Source: Isurus oxyrinchus (taxonomy: Eukaryota). Taken from it: a stretch of DNA of 64,000 nucleotides. Within the stretch, counting starts at the first letter, position 1. Each line of letters opens with the position of its first letter. The stretch lies in the NCBI GenBank assembly GCA_026770705.1, contig JANJGN010000071.1, positions 310,001 to 374,000 on the forward strand, in the 5' to 3' direction. The notes below the pieces were generated by a model. The model had not been told where the DNA came from, made no database searches, and was given only the letters and a program-made list of their open reading frames with translations. Both the position numbers and the translations under genes were made by a program. Below, piece by piece: positions 6,311 through 49,104 of this stretch.

Positions 6311-6659
6311 ACACACACACACACACACGCTCATAAAGACAGACACAAACACAGTCACGTGAGGTGAATAGTGTCGATGTATTTAAGGGGAAGCTGGATA
6401 AACACACGAGGGAGAAATGAATAGAAGGATATGGTGATGGGGTGAGATGGAGAAGGGGTGGGCGGAGACTCGTGTGGAGCAGAAACTCCAGCATGGAGCA
6501 GATGGGCCGAATGGCTTCTTTCCCTGCTGTAAAACGCAGGTAAAGTTTCAGTTGGAATTAATGAACAGGGCCTGTGTGAAATAGATTGCTAAGCAGTAGA
6601 TAAGGAGGGGAGAGGCTGTGGCATGGTGCAGGATGACCTTGCGTGAATGAGGCCAGGGT

Positions 6660-6770
6660 CTAATATCTACAGCAGAGACCACAAGTCTCATTTGATTCTC
6701 TCGAATTACAGCAGTTACAGCAGAATCTGCAGAATCTGCCCATTCTCTTCTGGCGCTGCAGCAAGGAGCC
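6660..6770 (-). CDS. HAMP: Hepcidin exon 3 (GSLLQRQKR|MGRFCRFCCNCCNSRESNETCGLCCRY*)
   Basis: ttttccag acceptor, 111 nt to TAG; RQKR furin site followed by the hepcidin C-x2-CC-x-CC-xn-C-x2-CC 8-cysteine pattern. Confidence 0.93.
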   Translation of the reverse strand, partial: GSLLQRQKRMGRFCRFCCNCCNSRESNETCGLCCRY

Positions 6771-6857
6771 CTGGAAAAGCAGGAGCACAATAGGTGAGAA
6801 CATTCCGGAAAGAAAGAAGGCATCATTTCAATCAAGCGCGTCATTGGAAGGAGGATG

Positions 6858-7240
6858 GCGCATTTCTATAGCGCCTTTCCCCTCCTCAGGATGGCCCAAA
6901 GTGTTCCACAGCTGAAGGAAGGACTTTTTCTGAAGTGGGCTCACCGCTGTAATGTAGGAAACGCAGCAGGCAATTCACGCACAGCAAGATCCCACAAACA
7001 GAAATGTGATAATGGCCCCGATTTTCAGTTTTTTACCAATGTCAGTTGAGGGATAAATGTTTGCCCCAGGAAAGTGGACATAACTCCACCCCATCCACCC
7101 CCCACTACCCCCTCCACACATACCCCCAACTCCTGACGCACTTCATTTAAATTGTGGCCATGGAATCCTCTATATCCACCTGAGAGGGCAGATTGGTTGC
7201 CCCAGTTTAATGTCTCATCTGAAAGACAGCGCCTTCAACA
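6858..7240 (-). mobile_element. DeuSINE (SacSINE1/AmnSINE1-like) copy running into a 33-bp array
   Basis: Recognisable core (cacagcaagatcccacaaac...gagagggcaga...gtttaatgtctcatc); other copies 9260-9570, 23695-23960, 48645-48945; family name from recall. Confidence 0.65.
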
Positions 7241-9103
7241 GTGCAGCACCCCCTCAGTACTGACCCTCCGACTGTGCAGCACTCCCTCAGTACTGACTCT
7301 GACAATGCAGCACATCCTCAGTACTGACCCTCCAACAGTGCAGCACTCCCTCAAGACTGACCCTCTGACAATGCAACACTCCCTCAGTACTGACCCTCCG
7401 ACTGTGCATCCCCCCGCCGGTACTGACCCTTCGACAGTGCAACACTCCCTCAAGACTGACCCTCTGACAATGCAGCACTCCCTCAGTACTAACCCTCTGA
7501 CAATGCAGCACTCCCTCAGTACTGACCCTCTGACAATGCAGCACACCCTCAATACTGACCCTCCGATAGCTCGGTCATTCCTCAATTACGCCTGGTGGTC
7601 CTTTTAACTCAGAGCTGAGAGTCGCAGAGAATCGAGCAGACACCCTGAACTGACACTTGCAGTGCAAGTACTGGGAGCGCGCTGGTCATTATCATGCTGC
7701 TGTCTGTGGGATCTTACTGTGCGCCAATGGATGATTCTTTTCCCACATTACATCAGTGACCTCACATGAAAGAAAAAAGCACTTGATTGTCTGCGAAACA
7801 CTTTGGGACGTCCTGATGTGTTGGAAGGCGCTAGAGAAATGCAAGTCCTCTTTGTCTTTCACTCGATCCTCTAAGGTGTCTGTTGATTAACCAGCCTCTC
7901 GGTGTTTGATGTAGGCCTGGTTATAAACAGTTAGAAGGATCAAATATCAAAAGTGCTTTGGCTGACAGTCAAACCGATTGTGCATTCGGAGAGATTAGAT
8001 ATGGTCTGCACACAATGACTCCAGCCTCTGGCACTGACTGCCGCCTGGGGTCTCCCTTCCACATAACACTCACAACTTGCATTTACACAGCGCCTCTGGC
8101 ATTGCAAAATGTCCCAGCCCACATTACTGGAGCGTAAATCAGAGAGAAGTCCAACACTGAGTCACATATGGAGATATTAGGGTTAGGTGATCAAAAGCTT
8201 GGTCAAAGATGTCAGTTTTTAAGGAGCGTCTTAAAGGAGAGAGAGAGAGAGAGGCAGAGAGGTTAAGGGAGGGTATTCCGGAGCTCAGGGCCCCAGGCAG
8301 CTGAAGGCACGGCCACCAATGGTGGAGCGTTGGGAATCAGGGGGACCCGGGAGATGCAGTAATGTCAGAGATTTTGGAGGAACATCGGGACCGGAGGAGG
8401 TGTTCTCCTGCTCCATATCTCTCTCTCTCTTCCTCTCTTCCACTCCTCCTCTCCCTGTCTCTCTCTCTCCTACTCTTCCGCTCAATTGCCCTCTCTCCCA
8501 ATCTTTCTCTCCTCTCTCCCTTTTCCTGTCTCTCTCCCTCTCTCTCCCCTGTCTCCTTCTCCCACTCTGTATCTCTCCCTCTCTCTCACACTATTTTTGT
8601 ACCTTTCGCTCAGTCTGTAACTCTCCCTTTCCTGTTAATTTCTCTCTCTTGGACAATCTCTCTTCCCTTTTCACTTTCCCTCACTCTGCATCTCTTCTTT
8701 AATTTCTCCCTCTGTCACTCTCTCCCACCTATGTTCTTTCCCTTTCACCCCTCCCCGTCCCACTCTGTGTCTCTCTCTTCCAATCCCTCCCTCCCCCATT
8801 CCATCCCTCTCTCCGACTCTCGACTCCCAGCCTCTCTTTAACCCACTCCCAGGCTGGATCAGTCTCCCTCTCACTATTCCCGGCGTGGGTTACATTTATA
8901 ATTCCTGTGGGGATATGTTCACTTCCTTGGAATTGTCTCTTCCCAGCTTTGCAAAAAAAGGGGGCGGGGGGGTTCGATTTCAAACATGCCTCCTGAGTAT
9001 AACCGAGACAGACTGCCACTGAAATCAGCTTGAAATCAGAAAACTTTCTGTGGAAGAAACGAGCAGGGAGAAACCTTAAAATAAGGAATGAATTTCCACC
9101 TAC

Positions 9104-9160
9104 CGTGTCCGGGGAATCCACAGATTTCTCAATCGTCGAAGAACCTAAAGCAGTGTCAAC
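9104..9160 (-). CDS. HAMP: Hepcidin exon 2 (propiece VDTALGSSTIEKSVDSPDT)
   Basis: Polypyrimidine tract + tgcag acceptor, ACG|gtaggt donor, 57 nt, phase 0-0; similar in size and phase to vertebrate HAMP exon 2. Confidence 0.8.
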
Positions 9161-9914
9161 CTGCAAAAAGAAAGAATTTATCAGGGAGAAAGTGAGAGGA
9201 GGATTGAGGGAGAGGGAGAGAGAGAGAGAGAGGTACAGGAGAGAGAGGGGGAGGAGGACAGACTTGCATTTCTCTAACGCCTTTCACCACATCCCAAAGC
9301 ATTTCACAGCCACTGAAGGATGTTTTTGAAGTGCACTCACACTGTAGGAAATGTGGCAGCTGATTTGTGCACAGCAAGATCCCACAAATAGCAATGTGAT
9401 CATGGCCTAGATCATCTGTTTTTGGTGATGTTGGGTGAGGGATAAATATTGGTCCCAGGACACCGGGGAGAACACCCCCTGCTCTTCCTCCAAATAGTGG
9501 CTGTGGGATCTTTCACACCCGCCCGAGAGGGCAGACGGGGGACTCGGTTTAATGTCTCATTCAACATTGTTGTGCTCCCTCAGTACTAACCCTTTGACAC
9601 TGCAGCACTCCCTCAGTACTAACCCTTCGATAGTGCTGCACTCCCACAGTATTGTCCCTCCGTCAGTGCAGCGCTACCTCAGTACTGACCCTCCGACAGT
9701 GCAACACTTCCACAGTACTGACCCTGTAACAATGCAGCACTTCCTCAGTACTGACCTCCGACAGTATAGCACTCACTCAGTACTGTCCCTCCAATAGTGC
9801 AACACTTCCATACTACTGACCCTCTGACAGTCCAGCACTCCCTCAGCACGGAGTGTTGACCGACGTTATGGGACTGAATTCCCTGGAGTGAGACTCAGAC
9901 CAGAGATTTAGGTA

Positions 9915-10790
9915 GGGTTGTTCCGGCTGGAGGAGGTTACAGAGATAGGGAGGGTTGTAGAGGCTGTAGGAGGTAACAGAGATAGGGAGGGTTCTAGAGG
10001 CTGTAGGAGGTGACAGAGATAGGGAAGGTTGTAGGGGCTGTAGGAGGTTACAGAGATAGGGAGGTGAGTAGGGGCTGTAGGAGGTTAAAGAGATGGGGGG
10101 GTTGTGGGGGCTGGAGGAGGTTACAGAGGTAGGGAGGGTTGTAGAGGCTGGAGGAGGTTACCAAAATAGATACTGTTGTAGGGGCCACAGTAGGTTACAG
10201 AGATAGGGAGAGTTATAGTGTGGAGAGGACGTTATAGAGTTCATGAGCATTGTAGGGGCTGGAGGAGGTTACAGTGATTCTGAGGGTCGTGGGGCCTGGA
10301 GGAGGTTACAGAGATAGGGAGGGTTGTAGGGCCTGGAGGAGGTTACAGAGATAGGGAGGGTTGTAGGGTCTGGAGCAGGTTACAGAGATAGGGAGGGTTG
10401 TAGGGTCTAGAGGAGGTTACAGTGATCATGAGGGTTGTGGGGCCTGGGGGAGGTTACAGAGATAGGTAGGGTTGTAGGGGCTGGAGGAGGTTACAGAGAT
10501 AGGGAGGTTTATAGGGGCTGGAGGAGGTTACAGAGATAGGGAGGGTTGTAGGGGCTGGAGGAGGTTACAGAGATAGGGACAGTTGTAGGGGCTGGAGGAA
10601 GTTACAGAGATAGGGATTGTTGTAGGGGCTGGAGGAGGTTACAGATATAGGGAGGGTTGTAGCGGCTGGAGGAGGTTACAGAGATAGGGAGGGGTGTAGG
10701 GGCTGGAGGAGGTTACAGAGATAGGGAGGGTTGTAAGGCCTGGTGGAGGTTACAGAGATAGGGAGTGGCTGAGGAGGGATTGAAAACAAG
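9915..10790 (-). repeat. 37-bp minisatellite (CCCTCCCTATCTCTGTAACCTCCTCCAGCCCCTACAA) in hepcidin intron 1
   Basis: Tandem units; also 13375-13622, 44285-44530, 46280-48295. Confidence 0.95.
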
Positions 10791-10966
10791 AATGAGAATT
10801 TCAGGGGAAACGACAGAAGGAAATGATGTTAAATTCATAGAGGGCGACAATATTAAAGGCACGAACATAATAATATCAAACTGCGGAAGAGACCAGTCTA
10901 TCTGGGTGGTAGACGTAGAGTCATGTGCAAGAAACACCTCACCCAGAGGGACATCTCTTAGCTTAC

Positions 10967-11059
10967 CCTCGACAAGGAGAAGAAGTGACTCAGCTGCAGG
11001 GAGAGCAGCAAAGTCAGAGTGAACAAGACAAGTCGCCATTTCATCTGGGAGCTTCCCAT
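10967..11059 (-). CDS. HAMP: Hepcidin exon 1 (signal peptide MGSSQMKWRLVLFTLTLLLSLQLSHFFSLSR)
   Basis: ATG at 11059 in good Kozak context (gagATGG), second in-frame ATG at 11044; hydrophobic leader; 93 nt ending at phase-0 donor AGG|gtaagc; TATAAGA ~70 nt upstream. Confidence 0.85.
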
Positions 11060-11129
11060 CTCTGCCTGTCTCTTCTGATCTTCTGGCTCTGCTTTGATGC
11101 TTTGGTTTGTAACTAGAGGAGCTTCCTGC

Positions 11130-11320
11130 TCTTATACCTGAAACACTTGAAGGGGACAGCCGGGGGCGGGTTGCTGTGTGGTATCACACCCATTTCTGGA
11201 TATTGCAGTGTCGATGTTCCCTGTCCCACTGGCCTGGGACCAGCAGTAAGGTCACTGGGACATTGACTGTCTGGCACCGAGAACTATCAGTCCCTCCGCA
11301 ACGCCCTTCACCTTGTGCAA
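11130..11320 (-). promoter_or_regulatory. Hepcidin proximal promoter, complete copy: TATAAGA, GC box, variant BMP element GGTGCC+CAGAC, C/EBP-like TTGTGCAA
   Basis: TATA 11130-11136, GGGGCGGG 11163-11170, GGCACC (minus GGTGCC) 11273-11278 abutting a SMAD element, TTGTGCAA 11313-11320; motif matches only. Confidence 0.55.
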
Positions 11321-11689
11321 ATATGTGTTCATACTGATGCAACACAACATAGCAAAAACAGAGGGGCTGGTTCTTATGTCGGCAAATCAGGTGAACCGCA
11401 TGCCCCCTAACCCCTTACTCCTCTCATTGCTACACTTACTATTTTACAAATTGTGTGCGTTGCTTTTATTTTGGACAAGGGGCCTCGAGGGGGAACTGAT
11501 TTACGCTGAGGTTTAGGGGTTAACTGTTTACCATGTGGAGACTGTCTGTCACCAGCTTTGTTCATGGTTTATCCAGGAACATTGAAGGGCATGAACGTTC
11601 TTGCTTTGTATGGAACAAGTTACCAACTGGGTTCAGTCATCGACTCAGACTCACATCAACATAAACTGGCTTCTGACAGGTAAGTTTCT

Positions 11690-12300
11690 ATTACATGAGG
11701 GTAGGAGGAGGCCATTTGGCCCCTCGAGCCTGCTCCACCATTCAATGAGATCATGGCTGATCTGCAAACTAGCCCCATATGGCTTTGTCCCATCTCCTTT
11801 AATACCTTTGGATAACAAAAATCTATCAGTCTCACAGGTTTAAAATGAACAACTTGATCGTGCATCAGTTCCTGTTTGGGGAAGAGAGTTCCAAATTTCT
11901 CCCACCCTTTGTACTTCCTAATTTAATTCCTTTTTAGGCTCTGACCCCGAGTCCCAGACTCCCCCCAACCAGGGGAAATGGTTTCTCTTTATCGCCCCCG
12001 ATCTGTTCCCCTTATTATCATGTGAACTTTCATCAAATCTCCTGCTTAACATTCTAACTTCCAGGGAATACAAGCCGAGTTTGTGTTTAATCTCTCCTTG
12101 TGATTTAACCCTTGGAGTCCCGGTCTCATTCTGGTAAACTGACACTGCTCTCCCTCCGAGGTCAATATATCCTTCCTAAGGTGTGGGGCCCAGAATGTCT
12201 CACAGTGACTCCAGGTGTGGTCTAGCCAGGGCTTTATGTAGACTGAAGCATGACCTCTGCCCCCTTATATTCTAATCCGTGAGATAGAAAGGGCAGAGTT
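11690..12300 (-). mobile_element. CR1 LINE 3' fragment (mirror 44820-45430)
   Basis: GLEYKGAEVMLQ, KLGLYSLE..ML motifs. Confidence 0.7.
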
Positions 12301-13623
12301 CCAGAATTGTTGTGTTTATTCGACAACAGAATAACAGAGGAAGGTTTCCTCTCTGCCCTCTTCAGCCCCACTGGGAAGGTCAGGATGAGAAGGTTGGGCT
12401 GGGTCCCCTGTACTGGACACTCGCTGAATCTTCCAATGATAGTTCTGGGCTGGATTTCAAAACGCATAGACAAGGATTCAGTGTTCCATCACATTCTGCC
12501 TTTGTCTCTTTTCCTCTCGTTCTCTTTCTCTACCATCCTCTCTCTCTATCTATCTATCTTTCTCCTCATTCTCTCCTGCTTCATCTCTATCACTTTCTTT
12601 CTACTTCTTTGTGTGTCTCTGTCTGTCTCTCTCTCTCACTCTTTCTTTCCTTGTCCTTATCTCTTTCAGTGTCTCCCTCTTTCTCTCTCTCTCTCTCTCT
12701 CTAAATGTGCCCCTCTCTAACAGTTTGGCCCAGTACTCTTATTTCCCTGTTTTACTGGTGTTCCATTTGAAGGTATACAAGACCAGATCAGACCAGAATG
12801 TTTATTTTCCAGTGTTTACTGTGTTTTTTTCATTCTGGGTGTCTCTCGACTCTGTCTGTCCCTCTCTGTCCTTTTATTTCATTCTTTCATGTGATGTGGA
12901 CATCACTGCCTAGGCCAGCATTTATTGCCCAACCCTAACTGCCCTTGTTCAGAGGCCACTTTTTAAAAGTGAACCACATTGCTGTGGGTCTGGAGTCACA
13001 TGTAGGCCAGACCAGGTAAGGACAGCAGATTTCCCTCCCTAAAGGGCATTTGTGACCCAAATACAAGAATCAGCAATGGTTTCCTGGTCATCATCGGACT
13101 TTTAATTCCAGGTTTTTATTGAGTTCAAATTCCACCAACTGCTGTGGTGAGATTCTAACCAGGGTCCCAGGAGCATTACACTGGGTCTCTGGATTACTGG
13201 TCCAGTGAAAATACCATCAGGCCAACACCTCCCCACTCTTCCCTTCCACCATCTTTCACACTTGTTCTGTCTCTCTCTCACTCTCCTTCTCTCTTCTCCC
13301 TCTCTCAGTCTCTGTCTGTCTCTCAATCTCTCTATCGCTCTCTATCTCCTGGAGGCTCTCTCTCTGACTGTCTCCCTCCCTATATCTGTAACCTCCCCTC
13401 TCTCTCCCTTTCCTCCAGCCCCTACAACCCTCCCTAAGGCAGCCTCCACCTGCCTCTACAATCCTCCCCATCTCTGTAACCACCTTCAACCCCTACACCC
13501 CTCCCTATATCTGTAACCACCTCCAACCCCCACAACTCTCCCCATCTCTGTAACCACCTTCAACCCCTACACCCCTCCCTATACCTGTAACCTCCTCCAG
13601 CCCCTGTAACCCTCCCTATCTCT

Positions 13624-14854
13624 TGAAGGGTTCTCAAATTTCCCACATTTTCCACATCATCAACAAGGATATCACTTTTGCACCTTTAAACTGCTGAGTT
13701 AAGTGGAAAACCCTGCAGACAGGAGGCTGGGCCCATGAAGGCCTGGGGCTGCACATGTCCGGGCTTATTGAGAGCAGTGTGGAATGTTTGGCCTGAAACC
13801 AGACAACGAGAGGAGACAGAATACGCATTCTTCCCTTTAATACAATCAACCCAGAGAAAGACTTCACTTCACACGCAACTGAAGCCCATCTAAATCTTGC
13901 ATCAATAATCGCTCCTAACTTCTGAGGCCGGCAATTTAATTATGCGAACCCATCAATACTCCACACATACAATGGCTTTCAGTTCAAAACTAGTTACTGG
14001 GCAAGAAGACAATGATAAACATCATGCGAGCCCATTAACAACAACGAGACATCAATCACCTGGGGAAGCCCACCAAAGACAAACAAAGAACGAACCTTGA
14101 TTTGGATTGCGATAAGAAACTCGAAAGGCAGTATAACTGGGCAGTCAGTTGGGAGAGAAACCAGCCAGCAGAAGGGTTGCAGTGTTGAAAGCTGACACAG
14201 GGCAGTGAGCAGTTGGGAGCGGCTGAAGCAGAGTTTAAGCAAGGAGATCTGGAGGTTTGCAGGCCCACAGGCAACATCACGGTGAGGGGCACGGGGTGGC
14301 AGGCTCAACCGAAGACAACAAGGCCACAACCGCTGCCCTCCATGAAGATCGACCACCCACAACCGCGCCCTCCACCCAACTGAAGACCCTTCACAGATTC
14401 CACAGACCAGGACCACGTGGGGATGACAGGCCCCAGAGGACACTAAGAGCGTCCCCCAAAACTGCAACCGGCTTACCTGGCTGGATTTCCAACTGTCGAG
14501 GAACCCTGGGTTGGTGAGCGTGACCCCTGACCTCTCCTAGTGCAATTTAGTTAGGGATGGGGGGTGGGACAAGGGTAAGGGCATTAGTAGCGTGATTCTC
14601 CCTCGTTATGCCATGTGTTCCCTATTCTTAACTCAGTGTACTTTGTAAGTCTGTATAATCTCAGTGTCATCCTAATGTTAGAAGTTCATTTGTGACTTCA
14701 ATAAACTCAGTTTTTGTCTTGCACCAAAACCAGTTGTCTGCTGCACTTTGTGACAAGCCCCGAATAAGTCCAAGGTCTAGAACCCAGGGAGTGGGAGTGA
14801 TTCAGACGGCTCAGAAGTCGCAGGTGAAGCTGACACACACCACCACACCCTACA
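13624..14854 (+). mobile_element. Probable solo LTR ~1.2 kb (mirror ~43052-44282)
   Basis: TGAA start, CA end, AATAAA ~14700; sits between two different satellites; no TSD. Confidence 0.5.
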
Positions 14855-15265
14855 AGGGGCTGAATGGCCTCCTCCTGTTCCTGTGTAACGGGCATCAGTG
14901 GCTGAATGGGCCTCGTCCTTTTTCTGTGTAACAGGCTCAATGGGGCTGAATGGGCCTCCTCCTGTTCTTGTGTAACAGGCTCGAGGGGGCTGAATGGGCC
15001 TCCTCCAGTTCCTGTGTAACAGGCTTGAGGAGCTAAATGGGCCTCCTCCTGTTCCTGTGTAACAGACATCAGTGGCTGAATGGGCTTGCTCCTGTTCCTG
15101 TGTAACAGTCTTGAGGGGGCTGAATGGCCTCTTCCTGTATCTGTGTAACAGGCTCAATGGGCTGAATGGCCCCCTTCTGTTCCTGTGTAACAGTCTCGAG
15201 GGGGCTGAATGGGCCTCTTCCTGTTCCTGTGTAACAGGCTCAAGGGGCTGAATGGCCTCCTTCTG
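14855..15265 (-). repeat. 43-44-bp minisatellite (ACAGGAACAGGAGGAGGCCCATTCAGCCCCTCGAGCCTGTTAC); mirror 42725-43050
   Basis: Tandem units. Confidence 0.9.
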
Positions 15266-15504
15266 CTCTGTAAACTTGTTGTGATACTGTAACTGCCTCT
15301 TTGGTTTCATTCAGCTGAATCTTCAGCTCTTCAGTCTCTTCCTTGTATCTCTTGCCTTCCTCCTGGAACATTGGACATGGTTGGGTCTTCCCTGCCAACT
15401 GTTTCTTCAGTTTGCTCAGAGCGGCACAGAATTCGCTTTCTTTCTCTTCAGGATTTTCCAGTGGAACCAACTCTGACCTGAGGGACACTTGCAGCCTGTG
15501 AGGA

Positions 15505-16206
15505 TGCTTCAATTCTTCAAACTCATTCCGAGATACACTCTCATATTCCCCCAGCAACTCAGCAACTCCTCCAGTGAAACATTTCAGAGCAGCTGAGCTT
15601 GGTTTTCTGGAACCAGTCTCGGCCCAGAAGACTAGGGCCCTCACCTGTCGCTATGATCACTGGAAGCTGGGCTGTCTGCTGCCTGTAGGACACAGGTACT
15701 GGGATGAGGTCCTTTCCCTGTATGGATTCTCCAGTGTGTGTCTTCAGCTGATCCATTGTTGGCTCTAAATTCAGCGTCTGGGTTCCTTCATTTAGCTGTT
15801 TAAATGTGGGCTCTTCCACCACTGTGTCTGAGGCTCCCGTATCTGCCCCATTACTAGTGGCTGCCCATTCACTTGGGTTGTGATGGTTATAGGTTCAGTT
15901 TTTACCACTGTGACATTGGACAGGGAATAGACATCGGTATCAGCAGCTTCAGGCTCTGTGATATTATTCACTTCCATCATGTTGGTGCACTGCCTGATGG
16001 GCTGTCTCGATTTCACCCTGCATTGCTTTATTACCCGCCCCTTTCTTGTGGCAGTGATGGCATTCTGCCCCCTTGGACCTGCAGGTGTCCAGTACGTGCT
16101 CAATGCCCCCCACATCGAGAACAGACCAACTTCGGAGTTGCTGCTGAAATACTCCCACGAAGCCTTTTAGTTTCTGGAGCGGCAGAGACTGTCTCTCGCT
16201 TGGCGG

Positions 16207-16245
<39 letters not shown>

Positions 16246-16645
16246 GTTTGAGCCTCACGCCCGGTGGTTGTTTCCTGTCCCAGCTGAGGACTGGTGCCAT
16301 GTTGTACATCCTGTAAATCCCGCCAGTCTCTCCCAGCACTTTCCATGCCTGGCGCTATTTTCATGGAGCGCTTCAAATTGATGTCGGCTTCTGCGAGTAA
16401 ACGGCTCTGAATGGCGTTGAGGTGAACGACACAAACCAATCGGCCCCGCAACATGTCATTGAGTGTGTCTCCGAGGTCCCAGTGCTCAGTCACCTGCTTC
16501 CACTTCACTGTATAGGTTGCGATGGACTCTCCCTGGGCCCTTACTCTGGAGTTAAACTTAAACCTTTTCATTATTACCCACGGCTTCAGCTGAAAACACA
16601 TCTTCATGAGGTCGACTAATTGGTGAAAAAATTTAGAATTGGGTG
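15505..16645 (-). mobile_element. Gypsy (K02A2.6-like) gag-protease relic, left arm
   Basis: RFKFNSR, LNDMLRGRLVC, CCHC remnant, DTGAS, GPSLLGRDW. Confidence 0.85.
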
Positions 16646-17802
16646 CAATACATGTCACTGTCTTCAGCTCTGAGACTGTCAATCCTCACCAAACAATTCT
16701 TCCCTTCCAAGTCGCCGATTATTTTAGCACGTCCCACGAATGTGGCCACCCCATAATTGGGATCTTTGGTGTATGTGATGGTATATTTCCATCTATACCA
16801 ATATTTATACCAAGCTCCGTGCAGTGCTGTGTAAGAGTGGGAAGGAAAGTCAAAAAGCTACACGGAATAACCACACAAGAGCTGCTGATGGCCCTCCGAG
16901 GTAGCGCCTTCATAGACCATCCCTCTGACGTCACTCCTGAAAGGCAACAAGGGAGGGGACTGAACATCAAAAAGCAGAATATTACTTCAATGGAGAGAGT
17001 CTACAGAATGCGGTACAGAGGGATCTGGGTGTCCTTGTACATGAATCACAGAAAGTCAGCATTCAGGAACAGCACGGAATGAGGAAGGCAAGTGGAATGT
17101 TGGCCTTTATTGCAAAGGGATGGAGTATAAAAGGAGGGGAGTCTTGCTACAACTGTACAGGGCGTTGGTGAGATTGTATCAGGAGCAGTGTGTACAGTTC
17201 TGGTCTCCTTACTTAGGGAGGGATAGACTCTGCATTGGAGGCAGTTCAGAGGAGGTTCACTGGGCTGATTCCTGGGATGAAGGGGGTTTGTCTTATGAGG
17301 AAATGTTGAGCAGGTTGGGCCCTGTATCCATTGGAGTTTAGAAGAATGAGAGGTGATCTTATTGAAACATATAAGATTCTGAGGTGGTGGGGGGTTTGAC
17401 AGGGTGGATGCTGAGGGGATGTTACCCCTTGTGGGGGAATCCTGTGAAGCAATAAGGATGTTTTACTGCATTAAAGGTGCTATATAAATGCACTGTCATT
17501 CCTATTGAAACAAGCTCTCTGATGCACAAACAGAAAATGCTGGAAAAACACAGCAGGTCTGACAGCATCTGTGGAGAGAGCAACAGAGTTGGTGTTTCGA
17601 GTCCGTATGAGACTTTTGCTTTTGCTAAATTCTCTGACTCGCTATTCACTCACTCTCTGTGTGATCACTAACCCTGTTCTCTATAATTAAATGTTCACTT
17701 CCTCACTCCAGGAAAGAATCCAATTCCCTGAGTTCCGATCAGTAATGAATTTGTACCTTGCAGCAAGCTGATGAAGATCAATATCAGACCGACCTCTCCC
17801 AT
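16634..17802 (-). pseudogene. Siglec-like pseudogene, left arm: leader exon 17802-17757, V-set exon 16936-~16645
   Basis: Leader MGEVGLILIFISLLQ|gt; V-set SCVVIPCSF...GDLEGKNCLVRIDSLRAEDSD; 2-nt insertion frameshift at ~16852 (A5 vs A3 in the right copy); cut by Gypsy gag before the F-strand Arg. Confidence 0.85.
17025..17440 (+). mobile_element. CR1 LINE 3' fragment in pseudogene intron (mirror 40560-40980)
   Basis: MEYKRRGVLLQLYRALVR...CVQFWSPYL. Confidence 0.8.
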
Positions 17803-18065
17803 CTTCAGTTCCTCATCTAAATGGAAATGATAAAGACAGAGACTTTTTCAGAAATTGTCCCCAGCGTTTCTTCCTCAAACAACAACTTGTGGTTAAATGG
17901 CACCTTTCAGTGAGTTAAACAGCCCCAGGGAATAAACTAATGTCAAGACAAGGAAGGAGAGATTGAGAAGGGACATCGCAAACCAATTCACCAAACACGG
18001 CAAAAATTCATTGTTCCCTCACTCCCTGTGCTGGGTGTCCAGCTTTTTCTCTCAGTGAGTTTAGT

Positions 18066-20132
18066 CCTCACAATCTGTCTCTATCACACTCTTCTGCTCT
18101 ATCTCTCTCTCTCACACACACATTCTCTCTCTAACGCTCACAATCTGTCTCTATCACACTCTTCTGCTCTCTCTCTCTCTCTCTCACACACACACATTCT
18201 CTCTCTAACACTCACAATCTCTCTCTATCTCACTCTTCTGCTCTATCTCTCTCTCTCTCTCACACACATTCTCTCTCTAACACTCACAATCTCTCTCTAT
18301 CGCACTCTTCTGCTCTATCTCTCTCTCTCACACACACACACATTCTCTCTCTAACACTCACAATCTCTCTCTATCACACTCTTCTGCTCTATCTCTCGTT
18401 CACTCACACACATTCTCTCTCTAACACTCAATCTCTCTCAAATGCACTCTTCTGCTCTATCTCTCTCTCACACACACACATTCTCTCTCTAACACTCACA
18501 ATCTATCTCTATCGCACTCTTCTGCTCTATCTCTCTCTCTCACACACACACCTTCTCTCTAACACTCACAATCTCTCTCTATCACACTCTTCTGCTCTAT
18601 CTCTCTCTCTCACACACACACATTCTCTCTCTAACACTCACAATCTCTCTCTATCACACTCTTCTGCTCTATCTCTCTCTCTCACAAACACATGCTCTCT
18701 CTAACACTCACAATCTCTCTCGCACTTTTTTGCTGTATCTCTCTCTCTTTCACACACACACATTCTCTCTTTAACACTCACAATCTCTCTCTATCACACT
18801 CTTCTGCTCTATCTCTCTCACACACACACCTTCTCTCTCTAACAAACACAATCTCTCTCTATCGCACTCTACTGCTCTCTCTCTCTCTCTCACAAACACA
18901 ATCTCTCTCTATCGCACTCTTCTGCTCGCTCTCTCTCTCTCACACACACACATTCTCTCTCTAACACTCACAATCTCTCTCTATCGCACTCTTCTGCTCT
19001 ATCTCTCTCTCACACACATAATCTCTCTCTCTAACAATCACAATCTCTCTCTATCGCACTCTTCTGCTCTATCTCTCTCTCACACACACACATTCTCTCT
19101 CTAACACTCACAATCTCTCTCTATCACACTCTTCTGCTCTATATCTCTCTCTCTCTCACACACATTCTCTCTCAAACACTCACAATCTCTCTCTGTCACA
19201 CTCTTCTGCTCTATCTCTCTCTCTCACACACACATTCTCTCTCTAACACTAACAATCTCTATCACACTCTTCTGCTCTATCTCCTTCTCTCTCACACACA
19301 CACATTCTCTCTCTAACACTCACAATCTCTATCTATCGCACTCTTCTGCTCTATCTCTCTCTCTCACACACATTCTCTCTCTAACACTCACAATCTCTCT
19401 CTATCACACTCTTCTGCTCTAACTCTCTCTCTCACACACACACATTGTCTCTCTAACACTCACAATCTCTCTCTATCACACTCCTCTGCTCTCTCTCTCT
19501 CTCTCACACACACACATTCTCTCTCTAACACTCACAATCTCTCTCTATCACACTCCTCTGCTCTCTCTCTCTCTCTCACACACACACATTCTCTCTCTAA
19601 CACTCACAATCTCTCACTATCGCACTCTTCTGCTCTATCTCTCTCTCTCACACACACATTCTCTCTCTAACACTCACAATCTCTTTCTATCGCACTCTTC
19701 TGCTCTATCTCTCTCTCACACACACACATTCTCTCTCTAACAAACACAATCTCTCTCTATCGCACTCTTCTGCTCTATCTCTCTCTCTCTCACACACACA
19801 TTCTCTCTCTAACACTCACAATCTCTCTCTATCACACTCTTCTGCTCTCTCTCTCTCTCTCTCACACACACACATTCTCTCTCTAACACTCACAATCTCT
19901 CTCTATCACACTCTTCTGCTCTATCTCTCTCTCTCACACACACATTCTCTCTCTAACACTCACAATCTCTCTCTATCACAATCTTCTGCTCTCTCTCTCT
20001 CTCTCTCACACACACACATTCTCTCTCTAACACTCACAATCTCTCTCTATCACACTCTTCTGCTCTATCTCTCTCACACACACACACATTCTCTCTCTAA
20101 CACTCACAATCTCTCTCTATCGCAATCTTCTG

Positions 20133-26100: not shown

Positions 26101-26299
26101 GACAGCGCCTCTACTGGTGGGAGAATGTAACTGTAGTTTGACTGTTTACATCGGCAGTGTCCATTATAAATTTGACAGTGGAAGTTATATGGAGGGAAGG
26201 TATCTGGAAATGCATACAGACATCAGATACAGAGAGATGATGCATGGAGTCTTGCTGTGCACGCTGCTTGCTCACATTAAACACTTGATTTGTTCTTAG

Positions 26300-26581
26300 A
26301 TGCTCCACAGAATCTCACATTTACTTCTCTTGAAATGATTAATGCTTCATCGATCAATATAATTGAGGGGAATTCTGCAGTGATAATCTGCTCTGTCGAG
26401 AGCTTCCCAGCTTCTAACCTGACGTGGCGACATCTTAATGTCCCAATGAACAGAACAAGTTCCAACAATGAGCTGTGGTTGGTGATTCCTCACGTTACAT
26501 CCAGGGACACTGGAGACTATCAGTGTGTGGCAGAGAATGAACATGGAGCAGTGGAGGGATTCATCACCATCACTGTGGAAT
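26300..26581 (+). CDS. Siglec-like receptor Ig C2-set exon (copy 1)
   Basis: ttag|AT...GAA T|gtgagt, 282 nt, phase 1-1; APQNL...CSVESFPASNLTW...DTGDYQCVAENEHG. Confidence 0.88.
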
Positions 26582-27335
26582 GTGAGTGTACACAGACTTC
26601 AACATCACTCACACACACACATACTCACACATGCAAAAACACTCATGTGTAGACACAAACATGCACGCTTACACACAAACATACGTTCAAACACATACAC
26701 AGAAACACACACAAACTCAACTCACACATACAAACATTCATGCGCACACAAAGACACACACATGCACACACACTCCCTCAAGCACAGACATACAGACATA
26801 CACACACAGACACACACACACACACACACACGCGTCCACACATGTGCTGACAGACACGCGCATACACACAAATACAAACTCACGTGCAGAAGTACACACA
26901 CAAGTGCGAGCTCCCTCTCCTCTTTCAGTTCTGCACTGGAGTCATGGTATCAGCTCCCATTCTGTGCTGAAGGAAGGTAAACTCCAGATCAGCAAGACCC
27001 TGAATTGGATGAGCAACCTCCTGAACAGAGAAATGTAGATTTAGCCCTCAGTGCTCCATCGATCAAATACAATTCATTGCCTATCAAGCCCTTGGGGATA
27101 TCTTGAGAGTGTTAAAGGATGTTTCTTTCATTCTAGAGGGTTAGCAACTCTACTGGCGGGAGGAAGCAACTGCAGTGTGACAGTTGACATAGGAAGTGTC
27201 CATTATAAATATGACAGTAATTTTTCATGAGGGAAGGTACCTGGAAAAGCATTCCAACATCAGATACAGAGAGATGATGCATGGAGTCTTGCTGTGCACT
27301 ATGCTTGCTCACATTAAAATCTTTATTTCTTTTAG

Positions 27336-27694: not shown

Positions 27695-28411
27695 CACACA
27701 GACACACACACACACAGACAGAAACCTGTAGGCACACACATGCATAATTATCCACACACAGTCATACACATACAAGCACATACACAGGAAAATACACACC
27801 CATCTGAAACACACACACACATTCATGCCCACACATAGACACACACATGCACATACTCTCACTCATGAACAGACGTAGACACACAGACACATGCGCATGC
27901 GCACACACAGACACACGTGTGCATACACACACAAACACACTCACATGTGCAGAAACACAAACACACAGATACACACACGTGAGTTCCCTCTCCTCTCTCA
28001 GTGCCGCACTGGAGTCTTGGTATCAGCTCCGATTCTGTGTTGAAGGAAGGTAAACTCCAGATCAACAAGACCCTGAATTGGATGAGCAACCTCCTGAACA
28101 GAGAATTGTAGATTTACCCCTCAGTGCTCCATCAATCAAATACAATTCATTGCCTGTCCAGCCCTTTGCGAAATCCTGAGGATGTGAAAGCAAGCTTCTT
28201 TCATTCTAGATGGACAACACCTCTACTGGTGGGAGAATGCAACTGCAGTGTGACAGTTTACATAGGCAGTGTCCATTAAAAATGTGGCATAAGACGTTAT
28301 CCTGAGGGAAGTTACCTGGAAATGCATTCAGACATCAGATACAGAGACATGATGCATGGAGTCTTGCTGTGCAATAGGTTTGCTCACATTAAACACTTGA
28401 TTTGTTTTTAG

Positions 28412-28693
28412 ATGCACCACAGGATCTCTCATTTACTTCGCTTAATATGATTTACGCTTCATCAATCAATATAATTGAGGGGAATTCTGCAGTGATAATC
28501 TGCTCTGTCGAGAGCTTCCCAGCTTCTAACCTGACGTGGCGACATCTTAATGTCCCAATGAACAGAACAAGTTCCAACAATGAGCTGTGGTTGGTGATTC
28601 CTCACGTTACATCCAGGGACACTGGAGACTATCAGTGTGTGGCAGAGAATGAACATGGAGCAGTGGAGGGATTCATAACCATCACTGTGGAAC
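28412..28693 (+). CDS. Siglec-like receptor Ig C2-set exon (copy 3)
   Basis: 282 nt, phase 1-1, both canonical cysteines intact. Confidence 0.88.
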
Positions 28694-29502
28694 GTGAGTG
28701 TGGAGATACATTTGTTTGTTTGTTGTCTCCGTGGTCTCCATGGAGCCATTGGGATCGTGTTGTTTTTAATCCAGTTTTCTTCAATCCTCGCTCAGTCCAC
28801 GTTATCCACACATCCAATTTTTCCTCTCCCTTTCTGTTTTTGCTCTCAGTTTCTCCTTCAATGGTTGTGAGGACAAGGCTGTCAGGTCTTCGTTTCCAAT
28901 CTCCGTACTTGACGACCTTTCTCTCTCTAACTGTCGTGAACAACCCTTTTAATTGCTGAACTTCTCATTCTTTAATTGATAAATATTATATATAAATGTT
29001 ACATGTTGAAATGCAACACCTGTATTCATAAATTGCTTAGAAATTACTAAACATTCAACAGCCAATGCAGCATTATCGAAGTGAGCTCACTGTTGTAATG
29101 TAGGAAACACAGGTACTGATTTGTGCACAGCAAGATCCCGCAAACCACCGTGTGATAATGACCTGATAGTCGATTATTTCAGTGAGGTTGGTTGTTACAT
29201 GTGTAGAGACTACATACCCTTTAGGGAGGGAAGCATGTCTCGATGTGGATGTGACTCCAGTCTCAGACACCATCATGGTTAACTCTTACCTGCCCTCTGA
29301 ACTGCTCTCCCAGTTTGGGACAAACCAGTGGTTCAGGAGGAAGACCCCCCACCACCTTCTCAAGGGAAACTAGGCATGGACAATAAATGTCAGCATTGCC
29401 CGAGAATGAGTATTTAAACACTGAGTGAGTGTATCGCTTCTCGAGATACATCGGAGCATCATTGTAAACCTGTAGTGCAGTAATTAATGGCTGTTTTTAC
29501 AG

Positions 29503-35577: not shown

Positions 35578-36102
35578 NNNNNNNNNNNNNNNNNNNNNNN
35601 NNNNNNNNNNNNNNNNNNNNNNNNNNNNNNNNNNNNNNNNNNNNNNNNNNNNNNNNNNNNNNNNNNNNNNNNNNNNNNNNNNNNNNNNNNNNNNNNNNNN
35701 NNNNNNNNNNNNNNNNNNNNNNNNNNNNNNNNNNNNNNNNNNNNNNNNNNNNNNNNNNNNNNNNNNNNNNNNNNNNNNNNNNNNNNNNNNNNNNNNNNAG
35801 ACACACCCACTCACACACACACAGACACACACACACACTCTCACTCACACACATACAGACATGTACACACANNNNNNNNNNNNNNNNNNNNNNNNNNNNN
35901 NNNNNNNNNNNNNNNNNNNNNNNNNNNNNNNNNNNNNNNNNNNNNNNNNNNNNNNNNNNNNNNNNNNNNNNNNNNNNNNNNNNNNNNNNNNNNNNNNNNN
36001 NNNNNNNNNNNNNNNNNNNNNNNNNNNNNNNNNNNNNNNNNNNNNNNNNNNNNNNNNNNNNNNNNNNNNNNNNNNNNNNNNNNNNNNNNNNNNNNNNNNN
36101 NN
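35578..36102. other. N gaps (35578-35798, 35872-36102; also 39230-39386) within CA/GA tracts
   Basis: Runs of n. Confidence 0.99.
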
Positions 36103-41752: not shown

Positions 41753-41785
<33 letters not shown>

Positions 41786-46001: not shown

Positions 46002-49000
46002 ATGGGAAGCTCCCAGATGAAATGGCGACTTGTCTTGTTCACTCTGACTTTGCTGCTCTCCCTGCAGCTGAGTCACTTCTTCTCCTTGTCGAGGGTAAGT
46101 TAAGAGATGTCCCTCTGGGTGAGGTGTTTCTTGCACATGACTCTACGTCTACCACCCAGATAGACTGGTCTCTTCCGCAGTTTGATATTATTATGTTCGT
46201 GCCTTTAATATTGTCGCCCTCTATGAATTTAACATCATTTCCTTCTGTCATTTCCCCTGAAATTCTCATTCTTGTTTTCAATCCCTCCTCAGCGACTCCC
46301 TATCTCTGTAACCTCCACCAGGCCTTACAACCCTCCCTATCTCTGTAACCTCCTCCAGCCCCTACACCCCTCCCTATCTCTGTAACCTCCACCAGGCCTT
46401 ACAACCCTCCCTATCTCTGTAACCTCCTCCAGCCCGTACAACCCTCCCTATCTCTGTAAACTCCTCCAGCCCCTACAACCCTCCCTATCTCTGTAACCTC
46501 CACCAGGCCTTACAACCCTCCCTATCTCTGTAACCTCCTCCAGCCCCTACACCCCTCTCTATCTCTGTAACCTCCTCCAGCCCCTACAACCCTCCCTATC
46601 TCTGTAACTTCCTCCAGCCCCTACAACCCTCCCTATCTCTGTAACCTCCTCCAGCCCGTACAACCCTCCCTATCTCTGTAACCTCCTCCAGCCCCTACAA
46701 CCCTCCCTATCTCTGTAACCTCCTCCCGCCCCTACAACCCTCCCTATCTCTGTAACATCCTCCAGCCCCTACAACAATCCCTATCTCTGTAACATCCTAC
46801 AGTCTCTACAACCCTCCCTATCTCTGTAACCTCCTCCAGTCCCTATAACCCTCCCTATCTCTGTAACCTCCTCCAGACCCGACAACCCTCCCTATCTATG
46901 TAACCTCCTACAGTCCCCACAACACTCCCTATCTCTGTAACCTCCCCCAGGCCCCACAACCCTCACGATCACTGTAACCTCCTCCAGACCCTACAACCCT
47001 CCCTATAACTCAGAATATTTGACAGTTTTACACACGGACAGCTTTGCCTTCCTTCTCTCTTTCAGTTATCTTGCTCCCTTATTGAAGTATCTAGCAAGGT
47101 GAGAATGGACAGGAAGTGTGACACTGAACAGCCTGTCTATTCTAGGAGCTGCTGTGTTGTCTTCATGGGAAATTCTGACTAAAATCAGCAAAAGACACTA
47201 ATTTCAGGCCATTGCTGTCAGAGTCCTAGCCACAAGATAGACTTCATCCCCTGAATTTTGTGTCCGATTTTCCACTCAAGCTTTCACCTCCGCACACACC
47301 CACCCCGACCCCACAAGTCACTCGCTGACCTACACTGGCTCCCAGTCCAACAACACCTCGATGTGATTATTTTCACACTTGATTTCCAATCCCTCCATCA
47401 CTCCGCTCCACTCCGTGTCTCTGTAACCTACTCAAACCTACAACCCTCTGTGATCTCTGCACTCCCCCAATTCTGCTGTCAGACAGGGAGTCAGTGTATA
47501 TCAGTGAGCACAGGGGTGATGGGTGAATGGGACTTGGTGTGAGTTTGTGCACTGGGTCACTGCTGAATTGGTTCCGAATCACAGCTCAATAAGAATGACC
47601 TCAATAACCTCCTCCAGCCCCTACAACCTTCCCTATCTCTGTAACCTGCTCCAGACCCTACAACCCTCCCTATCTCTGTAACCTGCTCCAGACCCTACAA
47701 CCCTCCCTATCTCTGTAACCTGCTCCAGACCCTACAACCCTCCCTATCTCTGTAACCTGCTCCAGACCCTACAACCCTCCCTATCTCTGTAAAATCCTCC
47801 AGGCCCCACAACCCTCACAATCACTGTAACCTCCTCCAGCCCCTACATCCTCCTGAACTCTATAAGCTCCTCTCCACACTATAACTCTCCCTATCTCTGT
47901 AACCTACTGTGGCCCCTACAGCAGTGTCTATTTTGGTAACCTCCTCCAGCCTCTACAACCCTCCCTACATCTGTAACCTCCTCCAGCCCCCACAACTCCC
48001 CCATCTCTGTAACCTCCTACAGCCTCTACAACCCTCCCTATCTCTGTAACTTCCTACAGCCCTTACAACCCTCCCTATCTCTGTAACCTCCTACAGCCTC
48101 TACAGCCCTCCCTATTTCTGTAACCTCCTCCAGCCCCTACAACCCTCCCTATCTCTGTAACCTCCTACAGCCTCTACAACCCTCCCTATCTCTGTAACTT
48201 CCTAGAGCCCTTACAACCCTCCCTTTCTCTGTAACCTCCTACAGCCTCTACAGCCCTCCCTATCTCTGTAACCTCCTCCAGCCCCCACAACCCTACCTAA
48301 ATCACTGGTCTGAGTCTCACTCCAGGGAATTCAGTCCCATAATGTAGATCAACGCTCTGTGCTGAGGGAGTGCTGCACTCTCAGAGGGTCAGTAGTGTGG
48401 AAGTGTTGCACTATTGGAGGGACAGTACTGAGGGAGTGCTATACTGTCGGAGGTCAGTACTGAGGGAGTGCTGCTGTGTCGAAGGGTTAGTACTGAAATA
48501 GAGCTGCACTGACGGAGGGACAGTACTGAGGGAGCGCAGCACTGACGGAGGGACAATACTGTGGGAGTGCAGCACTATCGAAGGGTTAATACTAAGGGAG
48601 TGCTGCAGTGTCAAAGGGTTAGTACTGAGGGAGCACAACAATGTTGAATGAGACATTAAACTGAGTCCCCCGTCTGCCCTCACGGGCGGGTGTGAAAGAT
48701 CCCACAGCCACTATTTGGAGGAAGAGCAGGGGGTGTTCTCCCCGGTGTCCTGGGACCAATATTTATCCCTCAACCAACATCACCAAAAACAGATGATCTA
48801 GGCCATGATCACATTGCTATTTGTGGGATCTTGCTGTGCACAAATCAGCTGCCACATTTCCTACAGTGTGAGTGCACTTCAAAAACATCCTTCAGTGGCT
48901 GTGAAATGCTTTGGGATGTGGTGAAAGGCGTTAGAGAAATGCAAGTCTGTCTTCCTCCCCCTCTCTCTCCTGTACCTCTCTCTCTCTCTCTCCCTCTCCC

Positions 49001-49104
49001 TCAATCCTCCTCTCACTTTCTCCCTGATAAATTCTTTCTTTTTGCAGGTTGACACTGCTTTAGGTTCTTCGACGATTGAGAAATCTGTGGATTCCCCGGA
49101 CACG
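46002..49104 (+). pseudogene. HAMP: Truncated hepcidin duplicate: exon 1 (46002-46094) and exon 2 (49048-49104), no exon 3
   Basis: Both exons identical to the left copy with intact splice sites; homology ends at 49843 inside intron 2, followed by a Gypsy integrase fragment. Confidence 0.85.
47013..47597 (+). repeat. Direct copy of 54973-55556 (gene B intron 1) inserted in the right-arm hepcidin intron 1
   Basis: Near-identical ~585 bp, absent from the left arm. Confidence 0.88.

What the first reader, a model, noticed from the sequence alone, without database searches (positions are those of the whole stretch)
6660..11059. Atypical shark hepcidin with an extended loop, a glycosylation sequon and no ferroportin-binding N-terminus
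Seen: the mature peptide after RQKR is MGRFCRFCCNCCNSRESNETCGLCCRY (27 aa, 8 Cys, net about +2). It has 8 residues between Cys5 and Cys6 (human has 4, HRSK), including an N-E-T sequon. Established: the DTHFP/QSHL-type N-terminus is needed for ferroportin regulation, and teleost hamp2 peptides lacking it (CRFCCNCC...CGVCCRF type) are mainly antimicrobial. Inference: an independently derived hamp2-like antimicrobial hepcidin in cartilaginous fish, possibly glycosylated. The ORF track misses it entirely.
Basis: partly seen in the sequence, partly recalled or inferred. Interest (0 to 1): 0.8.

Follow-up and report, generated by a model that had tools for sequence, protein, structure and literature searches.

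The report
Expressed long-loop hepcidin gene copy
This is a real, correctly spliced and strongly transcribed gene for a hepcidin-type peptide that lacks the usual iron-hormone front end and has a hairpin loop twice the human length, so it is probably a defence-type sister of the iron hormone, though no function was tested.

Summary
On the minus strand lie three exons (CDS 11059-10967, 9160-9104, 6770-6660) with GT..AG introns and a TATAAG box. It matches Pfam Hepcidin (E 6.3e-6). Its Cys5-Cys6 loop has 8 residues and carries N-E-T. In the PDB alignments the human loop has 4 and the bass loop 5. One RNA-type run (X1) holds both exon junctions exactly, with exon depth 100-900 times intron depth. 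The other 3 of 4 runs laid show no exon.

The same run holds sister transcripts that share the RQKR-M stretch and then diverge. One reads SHLSIC, like the fish type-1 iron-regulatory motif. So this is a diverged, type-2-like copy, not the animal's only hepcidin.

The scan has met this gene kind many times on other DNA of the same genome. Specific to this copy are a shorter N-terminus (4 residues before Cys1) lying in a perfect 2 x 9-base tandem repeat, and a truncated inverted sister copy in the window.

Antimicrobial action, glycosylation and independent origin remain untested. No relatives from other species could be fetched.

The parts
11131..11136 (-). TATAAG box, 77 bases upstream of the first ATG
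   Evidence: consensus match only, no transcript start mapped
10967..11059 (-). Exon 1 coding part: 31 codons, MGSSQMKWRLVLFTLTLLLSLQLSHFFSLSR. Signal peptide by eye; a second in-frame ATG lies at 11044
   Evidence: joint 9160|10967 in 11 contigs of X1
9161..10966 (-). Intron 1 (GT..AG), mostly a roughly 37-base tandem array at 9880-10765
9104..9160 (-). Exon 2: 19 codons, VDTALGSSTIEKSVDSPDT (propeptide)
   Evidence: both flanking joints in X1
6771..9103 (-). Intron 2 (GT..AG). A minor alternative acceptor at 7916 gives a short tail and a stop
   Evidence: joints 6769->9103 (cut +1; 9 contigs) and 7915->9103 (1 contig, depth 844); tail read by hand
6660..6770 (-). Exon 3 coding part: 36 codons plus TAG, GSLLQRQKR + mature peptide
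   Evidence: no 'other letters' listed at 6660-6770 in X1
6744..6755 (-). RQKR proprotein-convertase site. RMGR, three residues further on, is a possible second minimal R-x-x-R site
   Evidence: sequence; cleavage is inferred from the family, not shown
6663..6743 (-). Predicted mature peptide, 27 residues, Cys at 5, 8, 9, 11, 12, 21, 24, 25
6684..6707 (-). Hairpin loop NSRESNET (8 residues) with the sequon N-E-T at 6684-6692
   Evidence: glycosylation not tested
6720..6739 (-). Perfect tandem repeat of 9 bases (20 bases in register) that encodes R-F-C R-F-C at the N-terminus
   Evidence: 0 of 5000 shuffles of exon 3 reach it
6500..6659 (-). 3' untranslated region, at least this far. The only poly(A)-signal-like hexamer found is AATACA at 6383
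   Evidence: highest depth bin in X1; transcript end not mapped
46002..46094 (+). Exon 1 of a truncated inverted sister copy; coding sequence identical
49048..49104 (+). Exon 2 of the truncated sister copy, identical. Homology ends at 49847 and no exon 3 follows

Best explanation
A real three-exon gene of the hepcidin family.

Shown:
- Canonical splice sites and both junctions present in RNA-type contigs.
- Very high exon depth in one run.
- A hepcidin 8-Cys domain behind an RQKR site.
- Siglec-type genes as neighbours.
- Sister transcripts in the same run with other N-termini, one of them type-1-like.

Inferred: the roughly 86-codon precursor (31 + 19 + 36; never joined in a tool) is secreted and cut after RQKR. 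It folds into the four-disulfide hairpin with the 8 extra-long loop residues at the turn.

It has only 4 residues (MGRF) before Cys1 instead of 6, and none of the type-1 motif. So it most likely does not drive ferroportin. It more likely acts as a type-2-like host-defence (or otherwise non-iron) peptide, while a sister gene with the SHLSIC-type end keeps the iron-hormone role.

It is one copy of a lineage-specific multi-copy family spread by segmental duplication together with Siglec genes.
For: Gene model.

Family: Pfam Hepcidin E 6.3e-6. The best PDB matches that are hepcidins are 1s6w (E 0.12) and 1m4f (E 3.2), with all aligned Cys in register.

Chance: 1 pattern hit in the window against 0 in 300 simulated windows.

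RNA (run X1):
- Joints 6770|9104 (9 contigs, plus 1 variant contig of depth 13,927) and 9160|10967 (11 contigs, plus 1 variant), both CT..AC on the plus strand, which is GT..AG on the minus strand.
- Exon bins have depth 108,359-654,377. Non-repeat intron bins have about 650-810.
- No other letters are listed in 6660-6770.

Sister forms: loose ends at 6741 (SHLSICMYCC by hand translation) and 6735 (MGR-QQLCRF) in X1.

Type definitions: PMC8502971 Discussion passage. Hamp1 but not Hamp2 acts on ferroportin: title and passages of PMC5665920.

Neighbours: V-set exon 54298-54765 has best PDB hits Siglec-5/-8/-7, CD33 and MAG (E 4e-16 to 1e-13). That human HAMP lies beside MAG is recalled, not from a call.

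Multi-copy: a truncated copy in the window. The scan's notes on other DNA are leads, not tested here.
Against: - No function was tested.
- Net charge is only +2 with two Glu in the loop, weak for a membrane-active peptide. Sea bass Hamp2 as printed is no more cationic.
- The Phe two residues after Cys1 and the C-terminal CG-x-CC-R/K-aromatic are kept. The review says the N- and C-termini are what is buried in ferroportin and the loop is outside. So some ferroportin binding is not excluded.
- The RNA cannot be assigned to this copy. Exons 1-2 are identical in the window's second copy.
- The deepest exon 2-3 junction contig carries a base not in the window (Thr to Met, last codon of exon 2).
- X1 intron contigs differ from the window at 0-8 letters per 128-360 (table 8).
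- 3 of 4 runs laid (X5, X7, X8, another organism label) have depth 0 in all five exon-bearing bins.
- X1 is on record only as 'RNA? (a guess)'.
- Exon 3 alone is 0.2 bit below Pfam's cut-off.
- The single-sequence AlphaFold model is helical, not a hairpin, and its five models disagree (pLDDT 76, 62, 57, 50, 50).
Confidence: 0.6

Rival explanations
1. It is, or still acts as, an iron-regulatory hepcidin: it binds ferroportin despite the altered N-terminus, as agonist, weak agonist or antagonist.
For: It sits at a HAMP-like locus beside Siglec/MAG-type genes. Expression is very high in one run. The Cys frame, the Phe after Cys1 and the C-terminus are conserved. The long loop would lie outside ferroportin.
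Against: None of the six positions of the type-1 motif quoted is kept. There are 4 rather than 6 residues before Cys1. A sister transcript with SHLSIC exists in the same run. In sea bass the type lacking the motif does not regulate ferroportin (PMC5665920: title, search listing and passages).
Confidence: 0.15
2. This particular copy is a silent or decaying recent duplicate, and the RNA seen comes from sister copies with the same exon 3.
For: The family is multi-copy. The window's second copy is already truncated. The dominant junction contig and several intron contigs of X1 differ from the window. This copy has GGTGCC where the sister promoter has GGCGCC.
Against: The frame is intact, with four canonical splice sites and a TATA box. 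Nine contigs carry the junction exactly as in the window. No other letters are listed over the mature-peptide coding part. Three X1 intron contigs match with 0 differences (143, 193 and 145 letters).
Confidence: 0.12
3. It is a secreted peptide with a new, non-defence role. One example would be a glycosylated ligand or metal-binding peptide whose extended acidic, sequon-bearing loop is the working part.
For: The loop is the most changed part (8 residues, two Glu, N-E-T). Cationic charge is low. It is co-amplified with lectin-type receptor genes.
Against: Nothing points to a specific partner. Co-amplification is explained by segmental duplication of neighbouring genes. The sequon lies 7 residues from the C-terminus, where use is uncertain (recalled knowledge of oligosaccharyltransferase behaviour, no call).
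Confidence: 0.08

Closest known systems
Teleost type-2 hepcidin (hamp2), e.g. sea bass Hamp2 / PDB 1s6w bass hepcidin
   Same: It lacks the type-1 N-terminal motif. The core CRFCCNCC is identical and the tail is CG-x-CC-R-aromatic. It is multi-copy and co-exists with a type-1-like gene. Net charge is similar.
   Different: The loop has 8 residues instead of 5 and carries N-E-T and two Glu. Its origin is probably separate, but no tree could be built. Antimicrobial action is shown for sea bass Hamp2 in the cited papers and not for this peptide.
Type-1 / mammalian hepcidin (human hepcidin-25, PDB 1m4f, 2kef, 6wbv)
   Same: The eight-Cys frame and a three-exon gene with the peptide in exon 3 behind a basic convertase site. 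The locus lies beside Siglec-type genes; the human HAMP-MAG neighbourhood is recalled. The Phe two residues after Cys1 is kept.
   Different: There are 4 residues before Cys1 instead of 6, and no DTH/QSH-type start. The loop has 8 residues instead of 4.
The other long-loop hepcidin copies that this scan noted in the same genome (e.g. s1-864172, s1-863544, s1-869579)
   Same: By their notes they are the same gene kind: three exons, long loop, atypical N-terminus, very abundant spliced RNA, and Siglec neighbours.
   Different: One note speaks of a 29-residue peptide. This copy has 27. Run X1 holds a form MGR-QQLCRF that would be 2 residues longer. I could not read the other copies myself.

Membership tests
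Hepcidin (Pfam PF06446) | Profile match at or above the curated score | tested here: inconclusive
   Exon 3 alone scores 26.8 bits against a cut-off of 27, E 6.3e-6. The 47-aa ORF scores 27.5 bits. Profile positions 24-52 of 53 are matched. The joined precursor was not scanned, by rule.
Hepcidin (Pfam PF06446) | Eight Cys as C-x2-CC-x-CC-loop-C-x2-CC | tested here: met
   Direct reading. The Cys align with 1s6w and 1m4f.
Hepcidin (Pfam PF06446) | Three-exon gene: signal peptide, propeptide, basic convertase site directly before the mature peptide in the last exon | tested here: met
   with both junctions. The signal peptide is judged by eye only, and cleavage is not shown.
Hepcidin (Pfam PF06446) | Four-disulfide beta-hairpin fold | tested here: inconclusive
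   The single-sequence AlphaFold model is helical and its five models disagree. No alignment was available to improve it.
Type-1 (iron-regulatory) hepcidin | N-terminal motif Q-S/I-H-L/I-S/A-L (fish) or its mammalian counterpart, six residues before Cys1 | tested here: not met
   The peptide starts MGRF then Cys. The motif is as quoted in PMC8502971.
Type-1 (iron-regulatory) hepcidin | Causes ferroportin occlusion or endocytosis; expression follows iron | not testable with these tools
   Needs a peptide assay and challenge experiments.
Type-2 (hamp2-like) hepcidin | Lacks the iron-regulatory sequence and co-exists with a type-1 gene | tested here: met
   A type-1-like SHLSIC transcript end is in the same run (1 contig, loose end at 6741).
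Type-2 (hamp2-like) hepcidin | Common descent with teleost hamp2 | not tested
   No relatives could be fetched, so no tree was built.
Type-2 (hamp2-like) hepcidin | Direct antimicrobial activity | not testable with these tools
   Needs MIC assays.

The most novel reading that the evidence does not exclude
Cartilaginous fish evolved their own non-iron (type-2-like) hepcidin subfamily, separately from teleosts. It was amplified together with Siglec receptor genes by segmental duplication. Its doubled hairpin loop is N-glycosylated in vivo, which would make it the first glycosylated hepcidin. The copies diversify mainly at the N-terminus: MGRF-, MGRQQL- and MSHLSI- forms occur in one animal.
Probability: 0.2. 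Interest if true: 0.65.

Novelty: new variant of a known kind. Interest (0 to 1): 0.45.

Why it matters
Hepcidin biology in cartilaginous fish is almost unwritten. My five searches on hepcidin in sharks and their kin and one motif search of the held library found no paper that describes such a peptide. They gave only a remark that hepcidin was among nurse-shark plasma proteins (PMC9207270, one passage), and a review stating that the hepcidin-binding cysteine of ferroportin first appears in cartilaginous fish (PMC8235187).

A second case of hormone-versus-defence splitting of hepcidin at the base of jawed vertebrates would show that this split is a repeated outcome. It would also offer natural variants for asking which parts of hepcidin ferroportin needs: a shortened N-terminus and a doubled, possibly glycosylated loop.

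Tried and rejected
Relatives:
- The word search found no candidate.
- The all-against-all HMMER search with exon 3 gave 1 protein at E up to 0.001. This was P0001, a 105-aa repetitive protein without the Cys frame, which I reject as a chance match.
- The ESM Atlas gave no usable hit.
- A 36-residue query cannot reach significance against 1.8 billion proteins except for near-identical relatives. So these blanks say nothing about other sharks.

Structure: the single-sequence AlphaFold model was helical and unstable across models. I did not search folds with it.

Second full copy in the window: rejected. There is only one CC-x-CC in six frames, no SHLS next to a Cys frame, and homology of the sister copy ends at 49847.

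Exon 2 (19 residues) could not be scanned against Pfam. Exon 1 gave only a chance-level DUF hit (E 2.8).

Runs X5, X7 and X8 held only the repeats of the introns. The species was not identified.

Origin of the RFC-RFC repeat: it could be a 9-base duplication, or a 6-base loss plus one C-to-T change from the MGR-QQLCRF form. The two could not be told apart.

Supplementary files were not asked for. Those of PMC9207270 (nurse-shark plasma proteome) may hold a shark hepcidin sequence that bears on whether the long loop is general.
Full report
WHAT IS THERE. On the minus strand of 6660-11136 lies a compact three-exon gene.
- A TATAAG box sits at 11136-11131, 77 bases before the first ATG.
- Exon 1 (CDS 11059-10967, 31 codons) reads MGSSQMKWRLVLFTLTLLLSLQLSHFFSLSR. 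It has a basic start, a Leu-rich core and a polar end, so it is a signal peptide by eye. A second in-frame ATG lies at 11044. It ends at AGG|GTAAGC.
- Exon 2 (9160-9104, 19 codons, VDTALGSSTIEKSVDSPDT) lies between TTTTTGCAG| and |GTAGGT.
- Exon 3 starts behind TTTTCCAG| at 6770. It reads GSLLQRQKR followed by MGRFCRFCCNCCNSRESNETCGLCCRY and TAG at 6662-6660.
- All three borders are in phase 0, so the precursor would have 86 residues.
Every search was made exon by exon.

IS IT MORE THAN CHANCE.
- The full hepcidin Cys pattern occurs once in the six frames of the window and in 0 of 300 simulated windows of the same first-order composition.
- Exon 3 alone matches Pfam Hepcidin with E 6.3e-6 and 26.8 bits, a hair under the curated 27. 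The 47-aa ORF that runs into the intron gives 27.5 bits.
- Among solved structures, the hepcidin entries are the only matches with all Cys in register: 1s6w (bass hepcidin, E 0.12) and 1m4f (human, E 3.2). The other three listed matches (E 1.5-2.4) are unrelated Cys-rich or chance hits.
- Those alignments show the loop between the fifth and sixth Cys as 8 residues here, 5 in bass and 4 in human.

IS IT TRANSCRIBED AND SPLICED AS READ. The look-up of sequencing runs listed 14 runs, none on record as RNA. I laid four from four studies (X1, X5, X7, X8).

Run X1 (organism label A):
- It holds a joint 6769->9103 (cut +1, i.e. 6770|9104; CT..AC on the plus strand; 9 contigs).
- It holds a joint 9158->10965 (cut +2, i.e. 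9160|10967; CT..AC; 11 contigs). These are exactly the borders read from the sequence.
- The five exon-bearing bins have word depths of 108,359 to 654,377. Non-repeat intron bins have about 650-810. That pattern is that of a very abundant mRNA with some precursor, not of DNA.
- No differing letters are listed within 6660-6770.

Runs X5, X7 and X8 (organism label B) have depth 0 in all five exon bins and cover only the intron repeats.

So 1 of 4 runs supports expression. Tissue and species are hidden by the coding of names.

WHICH COPY IS TRANSCRIBED cannot be settled.
- The deepest exon 2-3 junction contig (depth 13,927, against 2,475 for the nine exact ones) has one other base. It turns the last codon of exon 2 from Thr to Met.
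- A minor exon 1-2 contig (depth 766) changes the first codon of exon 2 from Val to Gly.
- The eight longest X1 pieces (seven in the introns, one in the upstream flank) differ from the window at 7/360, 3/350, 8/340, 4/221, 0/143, 0/193, 0/145 and 1/128 letters (table 8).
- Exons 1 and 2 with the promoter are duplicated in the window itself (see below).
- The RNA therefore proves that this gene kind, with exactly this mature-peptide coding sequence, is expressed. It does not prove that this locus is the source.

SISTER TRANSCRIPTS. Two loose ends in X1 are informative (table 7; translated by hand and sent to no tool).
- A contig that lies on the pro-region down to 6741 (the Met after RQKR) continues with letters that read SHLSICMYCC. 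This fits 4 of the 6 positions of the fish type-1 'iron-regulatory sequence' Q-S/I-H-L/I-S/A-L quoted in the Discussion of PMC8502971 (passage). It has six residues before Cys1.
- Two contigs that lie on it down to 6735 continue as QQLCRF. That gives MGRQQLCRF, two residues longer than the window's MGRFCRF.
- The same animal therefore expresses at least three N-terminal forms behind one shared pro-region.
- Each is supported by one or two short contigs only.

WHAT IS SPECIAL TO THIS COPY.
- The N-terminus lies in a perfect tandem repeat of nine bases (20 bases in register, 6739-6720) that encodes R-F-C R-F-C. 0 of 5000 shuffles of exon 3 reach such a repeat.
- It may be a microduplication. Or it may be the result of a 6-base loss plus one C-to-T change from the QQL form. 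I cannot tell which.
- Either way, only four residues precede Cys1.

SURROUNDINGS.
- The window holds an inverted duplication, 8358-18580 against 49847-39417, at 92-97.5% identity.
- Its right arm carries the same promoter, exon 1 (46002-46094) and exon 2 (49048-49104), with identical coding sequence.
- Homology stops inside intron 2, and there is no exon 3. This is a truncated copy.
- In the 400 aligned bases around exon 1 the copies differ at two places. One turns GGCGCC (sister, 45783-45788) into GGTGCC (this copy, 11278-11273).
- Around the genes lie immunoglobulin-type exons. Exon 54298-54765 (minus strand) matches Pfam V-set and Ig_CD22, and its best solved relatives are Siglec-5, -8, -7, CD33 and MAG (E 4e-16 to 1e-13).
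- That human HAMP lies next to MAG is my recollection, not a call. If right, the locus is the old HAMP neighbourhood, amplified.

HOW IT MOST LIKELY WORKS.
- Shown: gene structure, splicing, abundance, family membership by Cys frame and profile, absence of the type-1 motif, and co-expression of a type-1-like sister.
- Inferred from the family: secretion, cleavage after RQKR (RMGR three residues on is a possible second site), and the four-disulfide hairpin with the long loop at its turn.
- Inferred from teleosts: where two types exist, the one with the motif regulates ferroportin and the one without does not, and is mainly antimicrobial (PMC5665920, title and passages; PMC8502971, passages).
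- I therefore read this peptide as a type-2-like, non-iron copy, probably a defence peptide, with confidence about 0.6.

REASONS FOR RESERVE.
- The charge is only +2.
- The loop, which is what looks most odd, is called 'highly variable' and 'largely extracellular' in the ferroportin complex, while the N- and C-termini are buried (PMC8235187, section 5 read whole).
- The Phe after Cys1 and the C-terminal motif are kept.
- The N-E-T sequon is real. But it sits seven residues from the C-terminus and next to a disulfide Cys. Whether it is used is open. What I know of oligosaccharyltransferase preferences is recalled and not from a call.

COMPARISON WITH WHAT IS KNOWN.
- It works most like teleost hamp2. 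The core CRFCCNCC is identical to sea bass Hamp2 as printed in PMC5665920 and to 1s6w.
- Membership by descent could not be tested. Three protein searches returned nothing usable.
- The sister transcripts share about 30 identical bases of pro-region with this copy. That hints at recent duplication or gene conversion within the lineage, hence a separate origin from teleost hamp2. This is a hint only.
- In print I found nothing on the peptide. Searches were: hepcidin with shark (208 papers hold both terms, 25 listed), with cartilaginous fish (47, 25 listed), with elasmobranch (16, 15 listed), with Callorhinchus (13) and with Chondrichthyes (11), plus a motif search (0).
- Most of the listings I judged by title and abstract start only. 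I opened six of those papers by passages, plus PMC5665920 and PMC8502971 from the hamp1/hamp2 search.
- Subscription journals and supplements were not covered.

THE SCAN HAS SEEN THIS BEFORE. A word search of the scan's notes says that 179 findings hold the word hepcidin. In some searches I saw eleven follow-up reports on other DNA of the same genome. Nine of them call a copy a real, spliced, strongly transcribed long-loop or atypical hepcidin gene. Several place it among Siglec genes. Two say that the same animal expresses a standard-looking hepcidin. I reached the same reading from my own calls (the loose ends came before I read those notes), but the notes are not independent evidence.

VERDICT. 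It is a new variant of a known kind, of moderate interest. Function, glycosylation and origin are open.

Noticed in passing
window 8358-18580 and 39417-49847: An inverted duplication with arms of about 10 kb at 92-97.5% identity. The right arm carries a truncated hepcidin copy (promoter, exon 1 at 46002-46094, exon 2 at 49048-49104, no exon 3). Whether its two exons splice onto something downstream was not tested.
   Followed up: partly
window 11273-11278 versus 45783-45788: One of only two differences in 400 aligned bases around exon 1: GGTGCC upstream of the complete copy, GGCGCC upstream of the truncated one. The same point was noted by the scan as a possible BMP-responsive element. No function was tested.
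   Followed up: partly
window 54298-54765 (-), 52656-53009 (-), 41030-41362 (+), 26290-26649 (+), 28402-28956 (+): Siglec-type immunoglobulin exons around the hepcidin copies. The V-set exon at 54298-54765 has best solved relatives Siglec-5/-8/-7, CD33 and MAG. The others match C2-set, Ig_3 or I-set profiles. 41030-41362 is below the Pfam cut-off.
   Followed up: partly
window 7916 (minus strand acceptor in intron 2): In run X1 one contig (depth 844) joins exon 2 to an acceptor at 7916. Read by hand, the frame then runs nine codons to a stop, so this minor form would lack the mature peptide.
   Followed up: no
window 9105 and 9159: Junction contigs of X1 carry single-base variants: Thr to Met at the last codon of exon 2 (the deepest contig) and Val to Gly at its first codon. 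These are alleles or sister copies.
   Followed up: no
window 9880-10765 (intron 1) and 7150-7600, 9560-9850 (intron 2 and intron 1): A tandem array of a roughly 37-base unit, and SINE-like repeats with the recurring frame 'VQHSLSTDP'. Both are very deep in all four runs laid, including those without any hepcidin exon, so they are transcribed or abundant genome-wide.
   Followed up: no
P0001: The only hit of the big protein search is a 105-aa repetitive protein with units like HRMGRFSDFCPNPCNE. It resembles the query by a short stretch only and lacks the hepcidin Cys frame.
   Followed up: yes
window 35578-35798, 35872-36102, 39230-39386: Three runs of N (609 bases in all) inside microsatellite-like sequence. 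They were left untouched.
   Followed up: no
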